DNA of 64,000 nucleotides, taken from positions 1,178,001 to 1,242,000 of the forward strand of contig NC_133623.1 of the NCBI RefSeq assembly GCF_048593235.1, in the 5' to 3' direction. Below, in pieces: positions 1,562 through 57,585 of the stretch. The notes beneath the pieces are model-generated. The model had not been told where the DNA came from. It worked only from the letters and a program-made list of their open reading frames with translations, and made no database searches. Position numbers and translations under genes: made by a program. The stretch is from Sminthopsis crassicaudata. Its lineage: Eukaryota. Numbering within the stretch: the stretch's first letter is position 1; the number at the start of each line of letters is the position of its first letter.

Positions 1562-1716
1562 TTTTTTTTTTTTTTTTCTTTTTCCCTGAGGTTGGGGTTA
1601 AGTGACTTGCCCAGGGTCACACAGCTAGGATGTGTTAAGTGTCTGAGACCAGATTTGAACTCCTGTGCTCCTGAATTCAGGGCTGGTGCTCTATCCACTG
1701 CGCCCCCTAGCTGCTC
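1562..1716 (-). mobile_element. WSINE1-type tRNA-derived SINE
   Basis: Reverse complement reads GGAGCAGCTAGGGGGCGCAGTGGATAGAGCACCAGCCCTGAA...GAGTTCAAATCTGGTCTCAGACAC...poly(A). 12-bp TSD ctgacattgagt at 1550-1561 and 1717-1728. Confidence 0.9.
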
Positions 1717-22629: not shown

Positions 22630-22800
22630 ATCTTTTCTTGGCAAAGATACCGGAGTCGTTTGCCATTTCCTTCTCCAGGGCATTTTACAGGTGAGGAAAC
22701 TGAGGTAAACGGGGTGAAGTGACTTTCCCACAAAGGTATTTGAACTCAAGTCCTCCTGACTCCCAGCTTGTCACTCTAGCCACTGCACCACCTAGCACAG
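22630..22800 (-). mobile_element. MIR/MAR1-type SINE
   Basis: tttgccatttccttctccagggcattttacaggtgaggaaactgagg...atttgaactcaagtcctcctgactc...ccactgcaccacctagc. Confidence 0.7.
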
Positions 22801-51619: not shown

Positions 51620-52449
51620 CCCTAGGGACACAGGGAGGGAGGGAGGAGGCCGGGAAGAAGAGGAGGGGTAGCGGGGCCCCCGCGCTAGACTGGGAGGGGC
51701 CGCTACCGGCCCCCATGAGAGCTAGGGATCCCCCCCCCCCAAGAACCAAGGCTGGGGGTCGGCAGCCGCTGCCAAGCGCCCTCCCCGGCAGAGGAGGGCC
51801 CCGCCCCTTCCTCTGCTGTCCCGCAGCCGAGGAGGAGCTGGAGCCGCTGCTGCAGTGGGGAGCCCTGGCACCCCGGCCCCGCCCCCGCCGAGAAGCAGGG
51901 GGCGGGGCCGGGAGAAGGCCGAGGACCAGGGGAGTCTCCCTTCCCGGGTTTGCTGGGAGACCCCAGTGCTGGCCGCCGCCCCGCCCCTCGAGGCCCCGCC
52001 CCTCGGCCTCAGTCTCCTCCCCTGCGCAGAGCCCAGCCCCAGCCCCAGCGCCTCACTCCCGGCTCCAGTCCATCCTCCCGCCGCCGCCGCCGCCGCCGCC
52101 GTAGCCCCCCGGCGGTCCCTGCCCCCGGGGAAAACCCCTCCTTCCCCTTTGGCGCGGGCCGGCCAGCCCCCCGCCGGTGCTCCCTCCCCCTAGCTGCCGC
52201 CCTTTCTCCTGCCCCACCGGGCTCTCCGGCCGCCCCCTCTCGGCGCCCTCCTCGGCCTTGCCCTTGGCCCTCAGCGTCTCCCCCCGCCCCGCCCCCCCTT
52301 CCCGGGCCCGGCCACGGCCCGCCTCCGGCCGCCCCGCTCCCGGTCGGCTCCTGGGCCCGTGCCACCTGGGCCGCATCCCGGCTGCTTGTCTCCCGCAGCT
52401 GCAGCCCGGCGGCTCCCAGGCAGATGCCCGCCTGAGGCGGCCCGGGACT
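51620..52449 (+). promoter_or_regulatory. CpG island / KCND1 promoter and 5' UTR
   Basis: GC-box- and CpG-rich, with a (CCG)n run at about 52079-52100, upstream of the ATG at 52450. Confidence 0.65.
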
Positions 52450-55400
52450 ATGGCAGCTGGGGTAGCGACCTGGCTGCCTTTCGCCAGAGCTGCCGCTGTG
52501 GGCTGGCTGCCCCTGGCTCAGCAGCCCCTGCCCGCAGCCCCCCAGGGCTGCGAGGCCCGCAGCGACGAAGTGCTGGTGGTGAATGTCAGCGGGCGCCGCT
52601 TCCAGACATGGAAGAACACGCTGGCCCGCTACCCGGACACGCTGCTGGGCAGCTCCGAGAAGGAGTTCTTCTTCAACCCGGACTCGGGGGAGTACTTCTT
52701 CGACCGGGACCCCGACCTCTTCAGGCATGTCCTCAACTTCTACCGGACGGGCCGGCTGCACTGTCCCAGGCAGGAGTGCATCCAGGTGAGCTCCGGCCTC
52801 CTGCTGCTGCTGCTGCTGCTGCCTCCAGGGAGGGAGTTGAGCTAAAGGGGGGGGGAAGGGGAGGGGGGTCTCTCCTTTTGTGTCTGGGGACTCAGACAGG
52901 ACTCTGACCAAGAATTCGGGCTCCCCGAGAGCGAGCAGCTTCACAGGGAAAGGCTCAAAAGATTTTCTTGGGCTTTGGGGAGGGGGGGAGAAGGAATCGG
53001 GGTGGAGCCCCAGACCCCCATCCTAGAGAAATAAGCCTCTCCCAGGGCAGACCGGGGTTTCGGGGCTCTCTCCACTGGGCAGTTAAGGGAGTCCCAGGCT
53101 GGCTGGCTGCCAGGGCCCACCCCATCCCCCAAGGAGAGAAAATGGCTGGGGGGCCAAGGAGGAGTCTTCCTCCCCGCTGGGACGGGGGAGGGGGGCACGG
53201 TGAGGGGGGGTGTCGTCCCCTTCCCTCCTCCCCCCTTCTCTTAGTCCCTTCCCATTCCTCAGGCTTTTGATGAGGAGCTAGCCTTCTATGGCATCGTGCC
53301 GGAGCTCATCGGTGATTGTTGTCTGGAAGAGTACCGGGACCGCAAGAAAGAGAACGCCGAGCGCCTGGCTGAGGATGAGGAAGCCGAGCTGGGGGGTCCC
53401 GGAGGGGCTGGGGCCGAGTGGGCCCTGCCGCCCGGCAGCCCCTTTCGCCAGCGCCTGTGGCGAGCCTTCGAGAACCCCCACACGAGCACCATGGCGCTGG
53501 TGTTCTACTACGTCACAGGCTTCTTCATCGCGGTCTCCGTCATAGCCAACGTGGTAGAGACCATTCCTTGTCGGGGCGGAAGCGGTGGAGCCGGTGGCCG
53601 GGCTGGTTGGCGGGAGGAACCCTGTGGGGACCGCTTCCCCCTGGCCTTCTTCTGCATGGACACAGCCTGCGTGCTCATCTTCACGGGGGAGTACCTCCTG
53701 CGGCTGTTCGCGGCCCCCAGTCGGGGCCGCTTCCTCCGCAGCGTCATGAGTCTCATCGATGCCGTGGCCATCCTGCCGTATTACATCGGGCTCTTCATGC
53801 CCAAGAACGACGACGTGTCCGGGGCTTTCGTGACCTTGCGTGTCTTCCGAGTGTTCCGAATCTTCAAGTTCTCTAGACACTCGCAGGGCCTTCGGATTCT
53901 GGGCTACACACTCAAGAGCTGCGCCTCTGAACTGGGCTTTCTCCTCTTCTCCCTCACCATGGCCATCATCATCTTCGCCACCGTCATGTTCTATGCCGAG
54001 AAGGGTACCAGCAAGACCAACTTTACCAGCATCCCGGCTGCCTTCTGGTACACTATCGTTACTATGACCACTCTCGGGTAAGTGACTCAACCCAAAGGAT
54101 GATGCCACTGACATCAACAGGTGTGATTAGCGTTCCCATGTCACAGACCGAGGCTCGGAGAGGCCAAGGGGCTCGGCCAATCAGAACCCCCGTCTCCCGA
54201 CTCTGAGGCTGACCGTTATATCCGATATCCCATTGTGTCTCTTTGTGTCAGAAGGATGGAGGCCAGGGAAGAAAAAGCGAGGCTGGAATCGCCCAGTATG
54301 TCGAGGTTCTGGATTTGGGGTAGGGGTTCTGGAGTCTGAGGGCCATTTCTTCATGGGAGTGATGGTGGGTAAGACGTTTGATTTGTCGAGTCCCCAGACC
54401 TGAAAGGGATTTTGAGATGTTCTTAGGGCCCAGTCCCCTTTTTGTTACAGGATAAGAAAGGAAGGATTCATCCTGGGGCATGGAGAACAGTGGGGGAGGG
54501 GGAGGGCGGGCAAGGGGAGGAAGAGGGGTGGCAGTCAGCTGTCATTGCAACAAAAATCCAAGTCAGAGAGTCAGAAGGGGGCTTAGGAGCTGCTTAGCCC
54601 AGCTCCCTCGTTTCTCAGGGAGAAAGGGGCTCTGAGGGCTCTGCTCTGGATCACACCGGGAGTTAAGGGGATCCCCATGTCATCCTGCTTCTCAATCTCT
54701 CCAAAATGGCCAAATGATGGACTTCCAGTATCCTAAGAAGAGATGGAGGCTCTCTTGATTTCTTCTTTTTTTTTTTTTTTTTTTTTCTTCCCTTCAGATT
54801 AATTTTATTCTCTTTTGACTAAGAAGTGGGGTTGGGTTTCTTCCCCCTCCTCCTTCCTCCCCCCTGAACAATTAAGAAAAGGCAAGGAAAGCTTCCGTAA
54901 CAGACACAGGTAGTCACACGAGGCAGATCCCCCACGTTGGCCATGTCCAGAAATGTGTGTCTCGCTCTGTGTCCCGAGCCTTCTCAAGTTTTGTGCCCTC
55001 GGGAGCTGGGTGCGCTCACTCGCTGCCCCGCTTGGGTCTTCAAGGTCTTTCCAGCAGCTCGTCTTGATGCTGGACGGCTGCTCTCCCGGTTCCCTGCGTC
55101 AGTTCCTCCCTACCTTCGTGGTTTTCTCTTTCTTCAGGGAGCCTCACAGTAGTAGGGCCAAAGTGGGGGTTCCAGGAGTAGAGAGGGCATCGGGAGACTG
55201 AGGCACAGAGAAGGCAAGAGCACCTAGCCCAGGTTGCTCGGAGGGATGCCCACTGCTGACACTGGGGTTTTCTGCCCTGAGTGGTTATGGAGGAGACAGC
55301 AAGGGGCCTGAGGACACCTAAGCAATAGGGTGGATCCAGAAGTCTGGGGGCCACTGGCTGTTCCCCCACAGTAGCTTGGCAGCCCTAGCCACACTCACCA

Positions 55401-57585
55401 GCCCTTCAGAGGCAGCTGGGAGCCAGCTTAGGGTTAGGAGGTATGTCCTGCACAGCGCTCGTTAGAGAGAGGAGAAAGCCAAGGCTCCAAGGGAGTTTGA
55501 AACGCTGATTCCGTCGCCTCCCACGTGCCCTCGAGGAAGCCTTGCCGCTATAAGGCCTTCGGTTTCCCTCTCTGTAAAATGTCTGGGTTATACCTGGAGA
55601 TCATGCATGGCTTTTCCCTTTCCCACCCTCACCCCAAGAGCTTCCTAGGAAGGATGTCCAGAAAGGGTTACACAGAGAAGGCACTGGGTCCCCTATCTCC
55701 TTCCGCCCCATCCGAGCCTGCCGGTGGGCACAGACAGAAATGGGCAGTCCTGCTGTAGGCCTTTGAGGCTCGGCCCTGAGCAGTCCTTAGTGAGGGCTGA
55801 GCTTCAGTGCGCCTTCCACATGGGCCAGAGGTTCTTAAGGTTCCCTTCCGTGGCCTCCCCGGTCAGAGTAAGGCTGAGGGAGAGCCAGAGTCCGGCATTG
55901 AGTGTGTGCCCGCAGGTACGGGGACATGGTGCCCAGCACAATTGCAGGAAAGATCTTTGGCTCCATCTGCTCACTCAGCGGGGTGCTGGTCATCGCCCTG
56001 CCGGTGCCCGTCATCGTGTCCAATTTCAGTCGAATCTACCATCAGAACCAGCGAGCTGACAAGCGCCGGGCCCAGCAGAAGGTGCGCTTGGCGAGGATCC
56101 GAATGGCTAAGAGTGGGACCACGACAGCCTTCCTTCAATACAAGCGCAACAGGGGCCTGGAGGTGGGTCTCTGCCCTGGGCGGAGGGCGCTTTTCCAGCA
56201 CTGCAGCCCCTCCTCACCAGTTGAGTGAGATGGGGGCTCCGAAAGCTGGGGATGGGGGGAAGTGAGGCTGAGGGTCTGTTGCTAGGGTGACCCATCTGAT
56301 GCTCTACCCGTGGCACTTTAGGACCAAGATGGTGCCGAAAGGCCTGCCCTGAACACACGAAGCCGCTCGGCTTTTGAACAGCAGCACCATCACCTTCTGC
56401 ACTGTCTGGAGAAGACCACGGTGAGACCCTTCCTCATGCTCTCTCTGCCCCCCCCCCCCCCCGCCCCCGCCCCGAGTGCCTGGGCGCTACCTTGGGCAGC
56501 CGCAGCCTTCTCCCTCTGCTCCAATGGAGTTCCCAATGTGCAGCCTCCCAGACTGTCTGACCCCTGGGGGGGCCTCCCTCACTGTGTCTTCCTTGGGTCC
56601 CCCCCGGCCCCCGCATCGCTCCCGGATGCTGACCCTCCTGTGTCTTTCTCTCGCCCCTCCCCCCAGTCCCATGAGTTCACAGATGAGTCTGCCTTCAGCG
56701 AGGCGTTAGGAATTGTTTCCCTAGGTGGTCACACCAGCCGCAGCACCTCCGTGTCTTCCCAAGCCGTCATGGGAAGTGGCACTCGGGCTAGCGGTCTGAT
56801 CTCCTCCTGCTGCCCCCGGCGGACCAAGCAGCGCCGGGCCATGCGCCTGGCCAACTCCACGGCCTCCGTCAGCCGAGGCAGCATGCAGGAGCTGGACACT
56901 CTTGCTGGGCACCACAGCCCAGGACCCCAGAGGTAATGTGACCCCTAGGCTCTGGGGCTAAGGAAGTGAAACTTGGGGGAGGGGGCTCCAGGTGCTGCTG
57001 GGGCAAACGAGGCTTTATAGACTTAATGAAAACGGAGCCACCAAGGAGCTCAGGGACTGTTTGGGCCCAGGGCCCTGCCCACAAGGCCAATCCCTCCCAC
57101 TAAGATGAGAATTCAGAGCAAAACACATCCTCATGGAGCGTGAAGCGTCCCCACTTGCTGAGCCTTTCCTGGCCCGAGGGTTGTAGTTAGCACTTATGGG
57201 GGCAGGGATTGCACCCACTCACCTGAGGTGGGCCGCCACAGGGGCTGTGGAGCTTGCAGCTGAGCCCCGGGCTGCAGCAGTCCTGAAGGGTTGGGGGATA
57301 ATCCGGGTCCTTCTGCTTCCATCCACCAGCCGGGCCAGCCTCAACGCCAAGACTCGAGACAGCCTGACTCTGAACTGCGACAGTCAGGACCTGGTGGCGG
57401 CCATCATCAGTATCCCCACCCCCCCGGCCAACACTCCAGATGAGAGCCTGCCACGTTCGCCTGCCAGTGCCAATGGAGAGGGGCCAGGAAGACCCTCAGG
57501 GGGCAGTGGTGGGGAGACCCTCCGGAACTCCAGTCTGGGTCCTTCTTATCTTCTCCACAACACTGTCAAAATCTCCTCCCTGTGA
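52450..57585 (+). CDS. KCND1: Voltage-gated potassium channel Kv4.1, intact, 672 aa
   Basis: Exons 52450-52785 ([22 protein letters not shown]1), 53263-54077 (S1-S5, S4 [18 protein letters not shown]), 55916-56162 (YGDMVP, S6 PVP), 56322-56420 ([12 protein letters not shown]), 56667-56932, 57330-57585 (TVKISSL*). 2019 nt with no frameshift. Confidence 0.97.
52801..52821 (+). repeat. (CTG)7 microsatellite in the extra KCND1 intron
   Basis: ctgctgctgctgctgctgctg, starting 15 nt after the donor. Confidence 0.9.

What the first reader, a model, noticed from the sequence alone, without database searches (positions are those of the whole stretch)
52786..53262. Extra 477-nt intron splits the Kv4.1 first coding exon: candidate intron gain in a mammal
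Seen: the KCND1 ORF breaks at ...ECIQ|AFDEEL... with a strong donor (CAG|GTGAGC, 52786) and acceptor (ttcctcag|GCT, 53262), phase 0, at a CAG|G proto-splice site. Splicing restores the HX5CX20CC zinc motif exactly. No transposon is recognisable inside. Known (recalled): human KCND1, KCND2 and KCND3 all encode the N-terminus through the pore TTLG in one uninterrupted exon of about 1.1 kb, and intron gain in mammalian coding sequence is considered very rare. Inference: because the three paralogues share the unsplit state, gain on a KCND1 lineage leading to this marsupial is most parsimonious.
Basis: partly seen in the sequence, partly recalled or inferred. Interest (0 to 1): 0.85.

Follow-up and report, generated by a model that had tools for sequence, protein, structure and literature searches.

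The report
Marsupial-specific new intron in KCND1
The fat-tailed dunnart's Kv4.1 potassium-channel gene (KCND1) has an extra 477-base intron, shared with a wallaby-like marsupial and the monito del monte but absent from echidna, placental, turtle and frog, so it is a rare mammalian intron gain, and the same gene also cleanly lost another intron.

Summary
In the window, which matches the Sminthopsis crassicaudata assembly, the KCND1 first coding exon is split at ECIQ|AFDEEL by a 477-nt, phase-0, GT-AG intron (52786-53262). Joining the two halves reproduces RefSeq XP_074134083.1 and the HX5CX20CC zinc motif.

An intron sits at the identical site in a macropod-like contig (452 nt) and in Dromiciops (569 nt). 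The three introns align with each other. Exon 1 is unsplit in echidna, Gopherus and Xenopus, in a placental-like genomic contig, and in 75 exon-1-only KCND1/2/3/Shal products. One gain on the marsupial stem, before the Australidelphian radiation, is far more parsimonious than many losses. Opossum DNA could not be fetched.

Splicing evidence is indirect. Seven RNA runs hold nearly all exon words and none of the intron words.

New here: Sminthopsis and Dromiciops precisely lack the conserved phase-0 intron at KRRAQQ|KVRLAR, so the gene shows one gain plus one loss.

No source for the intron was found: no transposon, no flank duplication and no similarity to the lost intron.

Earlier notes of this scan record intron losses elsewhere in this genome, but not this gain.

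The parts
52450..52785 (+). KCND1 coding exon 1a (Met1-Gln112; N-terminus and first half of the T1 domain, with His and the first Cys of the zinc motif)
   Evidence: Translation; exact threading of P0151; tblastn.
52786..53262 (+). Marsupial-specific U2-type GT-AG intron: 477 nt, phase 0, 64% G+C, in-frame stop at its codon 20
   Evidence: Orthologous introns at the same site in L001 (383-834) and L004 (1837-2405). Absent in L003, L005, L006. RNA runs hold the flanking exons but 0.00 of the intron words.
53263..54077 (+). KCND1 coding exon 1b (Ala113 to the pore TTL-G; rest of T1 with the CC of the zinc motif, S1-S5 and pore helix)
54078..55915 (+). Ancient phase-2 intron at TTL|G, shared with echidna, turtle and frog
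55916..56162 (+). Fused exon, corresponding to exons 2+3 of echidna, turtle and frog. The conserved phase-0 intron at KRRAQQ|KVRLAR would lie between 56078 and 56079 and is precisely absent
   Evidence: The same fusion is in Dromiciops L004 4988-5234.
56322..56420 (+). KCND1 coding exon (DQD...EKTT)
56667..56932 (+). KCND1 coding exon (SHEF...GPQ)
57330..57585 (+). KCND1 last coding exon, including the stop codon
52964..53033 (.). About 70-nt micro-inversion inside the new intron, specific to the Sminthopsis lineage relative to Dromiciops and the macropod contig
   Evidence: reverse-complement local score 39 against 14 forward (Dromiciops); 27 against 9 (macropod).

Best explanation
This is a genuine, constitutively removed U2-type spliceosomal intron. 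About 0.5 kb of DNA was inserted into the previously unbroken first coding exon of KCND1, exactly between the codons for Gln112 and Ala113. The insertion site was a CAG|G proto-splice site. It happened in the marsupial lineage after the split from placentals and before the common ancestor of dasyurids, diprotodonts and Dromiciops. The coding sequence on either side was left untouched, so this was an insertion and not conversion of exon sequence into an intron. The channel protein now depends on splicing, because a retained intron gives an early stop inside the T1 tetramerisation domain. In the same evolutionary interval the gene precisely lost the conserved phase-0 intron at KRRAQQ|KVRLAR. The marsupial gene therefore still has five coding-region introns, but one is in a new place. 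Shown: the position, the conservation among three marsupial orders, the absence in outgroups, and the absence of intron sequence from RNA assemblies that hold the exons. Inferred: the mechanism of insertion. I consider filler DNA captured during double-strand-break repair at the proto-splice site most likely, with the 4-nt CAGG direct repeat at the two junctions as the only trace. No source sequence could be identified.
For: Sequence and exact threading of the RefSeq protein. The window matches the Sminthopsis assembly locus over the stretch checked. Same-site introns have conserved ends and 70-80% alignable identity in a macropod-like contig and in Dromiciops. Exon 1 is unsplit in echidna, Gopherus and Xenopus genomic DNA. 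A placental-like genomic contig has an ORF running through the site and stopping at TTLG (P0002). 75 exon-1-only products of KCND1/2/3/Shal have a contiguous EC..FDEEL motif and end at TTLG. Retained introns give in-frame stops in all three species, and two of the three lengths are not multiples of 3. Exon 1a is 97-99% identical in protein at 86-91% nucleotide identity, so the gene is under purifying selection. RNA-labelled runs X5, X6, X7, X10, X11, X12 and X14, from five studies, hold 0.45-0.69 of the sampled words of 52400-54100. Words lying wholly inside exons make up about 0.68 of that stretch. The same runs hold 0.00 of the intron's words. Loss of the other intron: with the fused junction shown.
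Against: The run kinds are guesses ('RNA?'), and contigs show presence better than absence. Four runs of one study (X1-X4) hold the intron at 0.91-0.98; these may be unspliced RNA or DNA. Didelphimorphia (Monodelphis, Gracilinanus) could not be examined at the DNA level, so 'all marsupials' is not shown. The placental state rests on one unnamed Logan contig plus recalled knowledge of the human gene. The insertion mechanism is unsupported beyond a 4-nt repeat, which could be chance.
Confidence: 0.88

Rival explanations
1. The intron is ancestral to vertebrate or Kv4 genes and was lost independently everywhere except in marsupials.
For: Intron loss is much commoner than gain in mammals (background in PMC3257199). 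This very gene lost another intron in marsupials.
Against: It would need separate precise losses in monotremes, placentals, turtles and frogs. It would also need losses in lungfish, sharks and teleosts, in the paralogues KCND2 and KCND3, and in arthropod and mollusc Shal. All of these give exon-1 products that run unbroken from Met to TTLG.
Confidence: 0.02
2. The new intron is the lost one. The phase-0 intron formerly at KRRAQQ|KVRLAR was excised and reverse-spliced into the CAG|G site 314 codons upstream, in a partly processed KCND1 pre-mRNA. That RNA was copied into cDNA and recombined into the gene, producing the gain and the loss in one event (intron transposition).
For: Gain and loss are in the same gene and on the same branch, shared by Sminthopsis and Dromiciops. 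Both sites are phase 0 and directly follow a CAG codon. The echidna intron at the old site is 499 nt, against 452-569 nt for the new intron. The loss is exact to the base, as expected for an RNA-mediated event.
Against: There is no detectable similarity between the new intron and the old-site intron of echidna, turtle or frog. It does not stand out from the other four introns used as controls (z at most 1.3). Little similarity would be expected after more than 160 My in any case. The large TTL|G intron between the two sites was kept, so an unspliced template or two recombination tracts are needed. The old-site intron length varies from 168 to 1897 nt among outgroups. Unchecked notes of this scan list other precise intron losses in this genome, so a coincidental loss is less surprising.
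Confidence: 0.1
3. The intron arose from the insertion of a transposable element whose target-site duplication and ends supplied the splice sites.
For: A 4-nt direct repeat, CAGG, flanks the insert. Transposon-driven intron gain is established in other eukaryotes (general knowledge).
Against: There are no terminal inverted repeats and no poly(A) or tRNA-like features. blastn and nhmmer, with single sequences and with a three-species profile, found no related sequence in the other 63.5 kb of the window or in 40 kb of outgroup loci. There is no similarity to the SINE copies present in the window. The test is weak: no repeat library and no whole marsupial genome were available.
Confidence: 0.2
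4. The 477 nt are an assembly error, a pseudogene disruption, or an optionally retained coding insert (exitron), not an obligatory intron.
For: In Sminthopsis the length is a multiple of three (477). Four runs hold the intron sequence.
Against: Three independent assemblies or contigs from three orders show it. The lengths 452 and 569 are not multiples of three, and all three introns carry early in-frame stops. The flanking exons are under strong purifying selection. Seven RNA runs hold the exons but none of the intron.
Confidence: 0.02

Closest known systems
Canonical Kv4 (KCND1/KCND2/KCND3, Shal) gene structure
   Same: The protein, the T1 zinc motif, and four of the five coding-region introns (TTL|G phase 2, GLE|D phase 0, EKTT|S/C phase 0, PQ|SR phase 2) sit at the same places as in echidna, turtle and frog.
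   Different: Marsupials split the large first coding exon at ECIQ|AFDEEL and lack the KRRAQQ|KVRLAR intron. Every other Kv4 gene sampled keeps exon 1 whole.
Insertional intron gain at proto-splice sites, with short flanking direct repeats, attributed to double-strand-break repair (described in Daphnia and fungi; recalled knowledge)
   Same: The insertion is exactly at MAG|R, a 4-nt direct repeat (CAGG) is at both junctions, no source sequence is identifiable, and the flanking coding sequence is unchanged.
   Different: This case is in a mammal, in an ancient conserved gene, and is old enough (more than about 60 My) that sequence traces of the origin may be erased. The repeat is too short to be statistically meaningful.
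Intron creation by tandem segmental duplication containing AGGT (Hellsten et al. 2011, PMC3265369, listed)
   Same: A functional new vertebrate intron created in one step.
   Different: That model needs an AG|GT exon junction and an intron made of duplicated flanking exon sequence. Here the junction is AG|GC in marsupials and outgroups, and the intron shows no similarity to its flanking exons.
Mammalian intron gains reported so far: intronization in retrogenes, and gains in transposon-derived domesticated genes (PMC3002245, PMC3565874, PMC3257199)
   Same: A lineage-specific intron in a mammal whose source sequence cannot be traced (the same difficulty is stated in PMC3257199).
   Different: Those cases concern young, retroposed or domesticated genes, or conversion of existing exon sequence. 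This is an insertion into the coding exon of an ancient, slowly evolving ion-channel gene, in the marsupial lineage.

Membership tests
U2-type GT-AG spliceosomal intron | GT at the 5' end and AG at the 3' end, with consensus-like flanks | tested here: met
   CAG|gtgagc (8 of 9 positions of MAG|GTRAGT) and ...ttcctcag|G; the same ends are in L001 and L004.
U2-type GT-AG spliceosomal intron | Polypyrimidine tract upstream of the acceptor | tested here: met
   The C/T-rich last ~45 nt are conserved in three species, including a shared ...AGTCC... block about 20 nt from the acceptor.
U2-type GT-AG spliceosomal intron | Removed from mature mRNA | tested here: inconclusive
   Indirect only. Seven RNA-labelled runs hold about all exon words and 0.00 of the intron words, and RefSeq models join the exons.
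Lineage-specific intron gain | Absent at the orthologous site in successive outgroups | tested here: met
   Echidna, Gopherus and Xenopus genomic loci; placental-like contig P0002; 75 exon-1-only Kv4/Shal products.
Lineage-specific intron gain | Present and homologous in several descendants of the inferred ancestor | tested here: met
   Sminthopsis, a macropod-like contig and Dromiciops: same site, and introns alignable at 70-80% identity. Opossums are not testable.
Lineage-specific intron gain | Insertion rather than intronization: no coding residues lost or added at the site | tested here: met
   ECIQ|AFDEEL is contiguous and collinear with all outgroups, with no residue missing.
Transposon-derived intron (introner-like) | Multicopy relatives, terminal repeats or other element hallmarks | tested here: not met
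   No related sequence in the window or in outgroup loci, and none to the window's SINE copies. Only about 100 kb was searched, so this is a weak test.
Tandem-duplication-derived intron | Intron sequence derived from the flanking exon, and an AG|GT junction | tested here: not met
   The junction is AG|GC. Intron against own exon 1a+1b local scores lie within the shuffle range.
Intron transposition by reverse splicing | The new intron is homologous to an intron lost from another site of the same gene | tested here: inconclusive
   A loss in the same gene and on the same branch is shown. There is no similarity to the old-site intron of echidna, turtle or frog beyond that to control introns. The divergence is too great for the test to be informative.
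Mirtron / intronic miRNA | A hairpin at the intron end that is more stable than expected, and a match to a miRNA family above threshold | tested here: not met
   Rfam matches at 53176-53252 score 19-32 bits against gathering scores of 60-105. Fold z-scores are -1.07, +0.50 and +0.18 in the three species.

The most novel reading that the evidence does not exclude
The marsupial KCND1 intron is a relocated intron. The phase-0 intron that all outgroups carry at KRRAQQ|KVRLAR was reverse-spliced into the CAG|G site in exon 1 of a partly processed transcript. It then returned to the genome through cDNA recombination, giving the gain and the precise loss in a single event. This would be a natural example of intron transposition, a mechanism proposed decades ago but never convincingly documented in an animal.
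Probability: 0.1. Interest if true: 0.9.

Novelty: new member of a known kind. Interest (0 to 1): 0.66.

Why it matters
Large comparisons of mammalian and vertebrate genes have found intron losses but essentially no gains in conserved genes (summarised in PMC3257199). Documented mammalian gains are mostly in retrogenes or transposon-derived genes. Here an ancient, highly conserved ion-channel gene acquired a clean insertional intron in the middle of a structurally critical coding exon, splitting the T1 zinc site. The event is well bracketed on the tree and has three diverged copies available for study.

The same gene also lost a neighbouring intron exactly on the same branch. That makes it a compact test case for how introns are gained in intron-rich, low-turnover genomes, including the long-standing reverse-splicing hypothesis. 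In practice, the split exon explains untidy older gene models such as the Sarcophilus Ensembl protein P0269. Together with the lost intron it gives two rare genomic characters for marsupial phylogeny. I found no paper in the held library that describes it.

Tried and rejected
1. **Read laying.** I used word shares of the whole stretch against the intron alone instead.
2. **Opossum and other marsupial DNA.** Monodelphis isoform X2 is not on record. For Monodelphis X1, Gracilinanus, wombat and bilby no DNA was served because the files are too large. The zebrafish gene range was too long.
3. **Logan ORFs from other marsupials.** A third protein search, aimed at ORFs carrying exon 1a plus read-through into the intron, found none. 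It did yield the broad set of unsplit exon-1 products.
4. **Source of the intron.** blastn, and nhmmer with single sequences and with a three-species profile, were run against the rest of the window and the outgroup loci. Only chance-level hits appeared.
5. **MIR/SINE lead.** A resemblance recalled from memory was tested against SINE copies actually present in the window (1597-1614 and 22714-22731). There was no significant similarity.
6. **Tandem-duplication origin.** The intron was compared with its own flanking exons: nothing. The 24-nt repeat D3 lies in mid-intron and is at chance level.
7. **Inverted match.** An 11-nt perfect inverted match joins the intron start and exon 1b (I19). It is not conserved in the other two species, so it is chance or lineage-specific.
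8. **miRNA or mirtron hairpin at the 3' end.** Matches are below Rfam thresholds, and the fold is no more stable than shuffles. It is a by-product of G-runs next to the polypyrimidine tract.
9. **Homology to the lost intron.** The new intron was compared with every intron of echidna, turtle and frog as controls. No signal stood out.

Full report
**1. What is in the window**

- An ATG at 52450 opens 112 codons ending ...[10 protein letters not shown] at 52785.
- The next bases are gtgagc.
- At 53263, after ...ttcctcag, the frame resumes with [20 protein letters not shown] and runs to the pore motif TTL-G at 54077, followed by gtaagt.
- The interruption, 52786-53262, is 477 nt, phase 0 and 64% G+C. 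If read through, it has an in-frame stop at its 20th codon.
- Across the junction the T1 zinc motif reads H-X5-C-X20-CC exactly.

An exact-match threading of the 672-residue RefSeq protein P0151 gives six coding exons: 52450-52785, 53263-54077, 55916-56162, 56322-56420, 56667-56932 and 57330-57585. P0151 is XP_074134083.1, KCND1 of Sminthopsis crassicaudata. The 100 bases at the start of that protein's gene in the fetched genomic locus (L002, GCA_048593235.1) occur exactly at window 52450, and tblastn gives the same exon pattern on both. The window is therefore fat-tailed dunnart, and NCBI's gene model already uses this splice.

**2. The same intron in other marsupials**

- **Macropod-like contig.** The representative-protein search returned P0001, an ORF on a 2.2-kb Logan contig (L001). 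It reads intron sequence in frame into AFDEEL. Its exons match the tammar wallaby protein P0286 at 100%, so it comes from a macropod or a close relative. Its intron is 383-834 (452 nt).
- **Dromiciops gliroides.** The locus (L004) has the intron at 1837-2405 (569 nt).

All three junctions read GAGTGCATCCAG|gtgagc ... (t/c)cctcag|GCTTTTGATGA. The introns align over most of their length, at 70-80% identity in aligned columns. That is comparable to or above third-codon-position identity in exon 1a, so the introns are homologous and evolve roughly neutrally. Two of the three lengths are not multiples of three, and all three introns have early in-frame stops. Exon 1a is 97-99% identical in protein at 86-91% nucleotide identity. 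The gene is therefore under purifying selection and must splice this intron to make a channel.

RefSeq proteins of eleven marsupial species all read ECIQAFDEEL.

**3. Outgroups**

Exact threading of each species' own protein through its genomic locus shows exon 1 unbroken from codon 1 to TTL|G in all three outgroups:
- echidna (L003)
- Gopherus evgoodei (L005)
- Xenopus laevis (L006)

At the site they read ...TGCATCCAG GCCTTCGAC..., that is CAG|G, a proto-splice site.

A placental-type Logan contig product (P0002, 565 aa) runs from upstream sequence through ECIQAFDEEL and stops right after TTLG. It therefore comes from unspliced or genomic template without the intron.

Among the 399 proteins collected, 75 are exon-1-only products of 340-400 residues. 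They carry the contiguous EC..FDEEL-type motif and end at or within a few residues of TTLG. They include:
- KCND1 of lizard, lungfish, sharks and teleosts
- KCND2 and KCND3 of birds, frogs and fishes
- Shal of horseshoe crab, mites and snails
- many ORFs called on raw metagenomic or Logan contigs

One gain on the marsupial line explains all of this. The alternative needs a dozen or more independent precise losses.

**4. Is it spliced?**

No junction reads were seen. The indirect evidence is good.
- For 52400-54100 (1701 nt), runs X5, X6, X7, X10, X11, X12 and X14, from five studies, hold 0.45-0.69 of the sampled 31-mers.
- 31-mers lying wholly inside the two exons make up about 0.68 of that stretch.
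- For the intron alone (52790-53258), the same runs hold 0.00.
- Runs X1-X4 (one study) hold the intron at 0.91-0.98, and two runs of undetermined kind hold about half. These are unspliced RNA or DNA.

The run kinds are guesses ('RNA?'), so this is strong but not final.

**5. A second change in the same gene**

| Species | Coding-region introns |
|---|---|
| Echidna, turtle, frog | TTL\|G (phase 2), KRRAQQ\|KVRLAR (phase 0), GLE\|D (phase 0), EKTT\|S/C (phase 0), PQ\|SR (phase 2) |
| Sminthopsis, Dromiciops | ECIQ\|AFDEEL (phase 0, new), TTL\|G, GLE\|D, EKTT\|S, PQ\|SR |

In the two marsupials the KRRAQQ|KVRLAR intron is missing, and the exons are fused exactly (...GCCCAGCAG AAGGTG..., window 56078/56079). 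The marsupial gene therefore shows one gain and one precise loss, and the intron count is unchanged. The old-site intron is 499 nt in echidna, 168 nt in Gopherus and 1897 nt in Xenopus.

**6. Where did the intron come from?**

Nothing recognisable was found.
- **Window and outgroup loci.** The other 63.5 kb of the window and the outgroup loci give only chance-level hits, by blastn and by nhmmer with single sequences or a three-species profile.
- **SINE.** The intron has no similarity to the SINE copies in the window.
- **Flanking exons.** It has no similarity to its own flanking exons, and the exon junction is AG|GC, not AG|GT. That argues against the tandem-duplication route.
- **Lost intron.** It has no similarity to the old-site intron of the outgroups beyond that to the four control introns.

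The only junction feature is a 4-nt direct repeat (CAG|G at both ends). This is compatible with insertion during break repair at a proto-splice site, or with a target-site duplication, but it is too short to weigh. After at least about 60 My of neutral drift, the failure to find a source is weak evidence. Drift within the intron includes a 70-nt micro-inversion in the dunnart.

**7. Reading**

With high confidence this is a true intron gain in the marsupial lineage, already modelled by RefSeq. I found no paper in the held library that describes it as a gain. Background papers state that large comparisons of mammalian and vertebrate genes found losses and no gains (PMC3257199).

The mechanism is open. 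I favour captured filler DNA at a break over a transposon, mainly for lack of any element hallmark.

The most novel reading not excluded is transposition of the lost intron by reverse splicing. A gain and an exact loss in one gene on one branch, both phase 0 and both after CAG, is suggestive. Three points weigh against it:
- The intervening TTL|G intron was retained.
- No sequence similarity remains.
- Unchecked notes of this scan list other precise intron losses in this genome, in PIM2, CTR9 and SLC52A3, so a coincidental loss is plausible.

An opossum genome would decide whether the two changes can be separated in time.

Noticed in passing
window 56078/56079 (inside exon 55916-56162); L004 4988-5234: The conserved phase-0 intron at KRRAQQ|KVRLAR, present in echidna (499 nt), Gopherus (168 nt) and Xenopus (1897 nt), is precisely absent in Sminthopsis and Dromiciops. 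This is an exact intron loss in the same gene and on the same branch as the gain.
   Followed up: yes
window 52964-53033: About 70-nt micro-inversion within the new intron in the dunnart, relative to Dromiciops and the macropod contig (reverse-complement alignment score 39 against 14 forward).
   Followed up: yes
window 52798-52820: A (CTG)n run of about seven units at the 5' end of the intron. It is present only in Sminthopsis; the other two species have unrelated sequence there (alignment A1).
   Followed up: partly
window 53176-53252: G-run/polypyrimidine hairpin at the 3' end of the intron gives weak Rfam matches to several miRNA families, including the mirtrons mir-1224 and mir-1281. All are far below the gathering scores, and the fold is no better than shuffles in any of the three species.
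   Followed up: yes
window 53571-53612 (S1-S2 linker, ...[16 protein letters not shown]...): A 5-residue Gly/Ser-rich indel. The longer form is in dasyurids, bilby and Dromiciops. The shorter form (IPC-T/A-AGGRAGW) is in wallaby, wombat, koala, sugar glider and both opossums. It is either a rare genomic character bearing on Australidelphian relationships or homoplasy in a low-complexity stretch.
   Followed up: no
exon 1 of window, L001, L003-L006: Third-position G+C of KCND1 exon 1 is 0.99 in echidna and 0.95 in Gopherus, against 0.81 in Sminthopsis, 0.67 in the macropod contig and 0.63 in Dromiciops. There is a strong compositional shift among lineages, and dunnart synonymous sites are as far from other marsupials as from echidna.
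   Followed up: partly
window 52787-52797 and 53298-53308: An 11-nt perfect inverted repeat between the first bases of the intron and exon 1b (VPELI codons) in Sminthopsis only. It is not conserved in the other marsupials, so it is probably chance.
   Followed up: yes
runs X1-X4 (study P1): Four runs labelled 'RNA?' hold the intron at 0.91-0.98 of words as well as the exons. They may be total or nuclear RNA with unspliced transcript, or DNA. Not resolved.
   Followed up: no
P0269 (Sarcophilus harrisii, UniProt G3VJ68): The older Ensembl-derived Tasmanian devil KCND1 model is garbled across exon 1a and reads ...QECIQ-G-AFDEEL with an extra residue. This is probably a modelling artefact caused by the unexpected intron and the G+C-rich exon 1a.
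   Followed up: no
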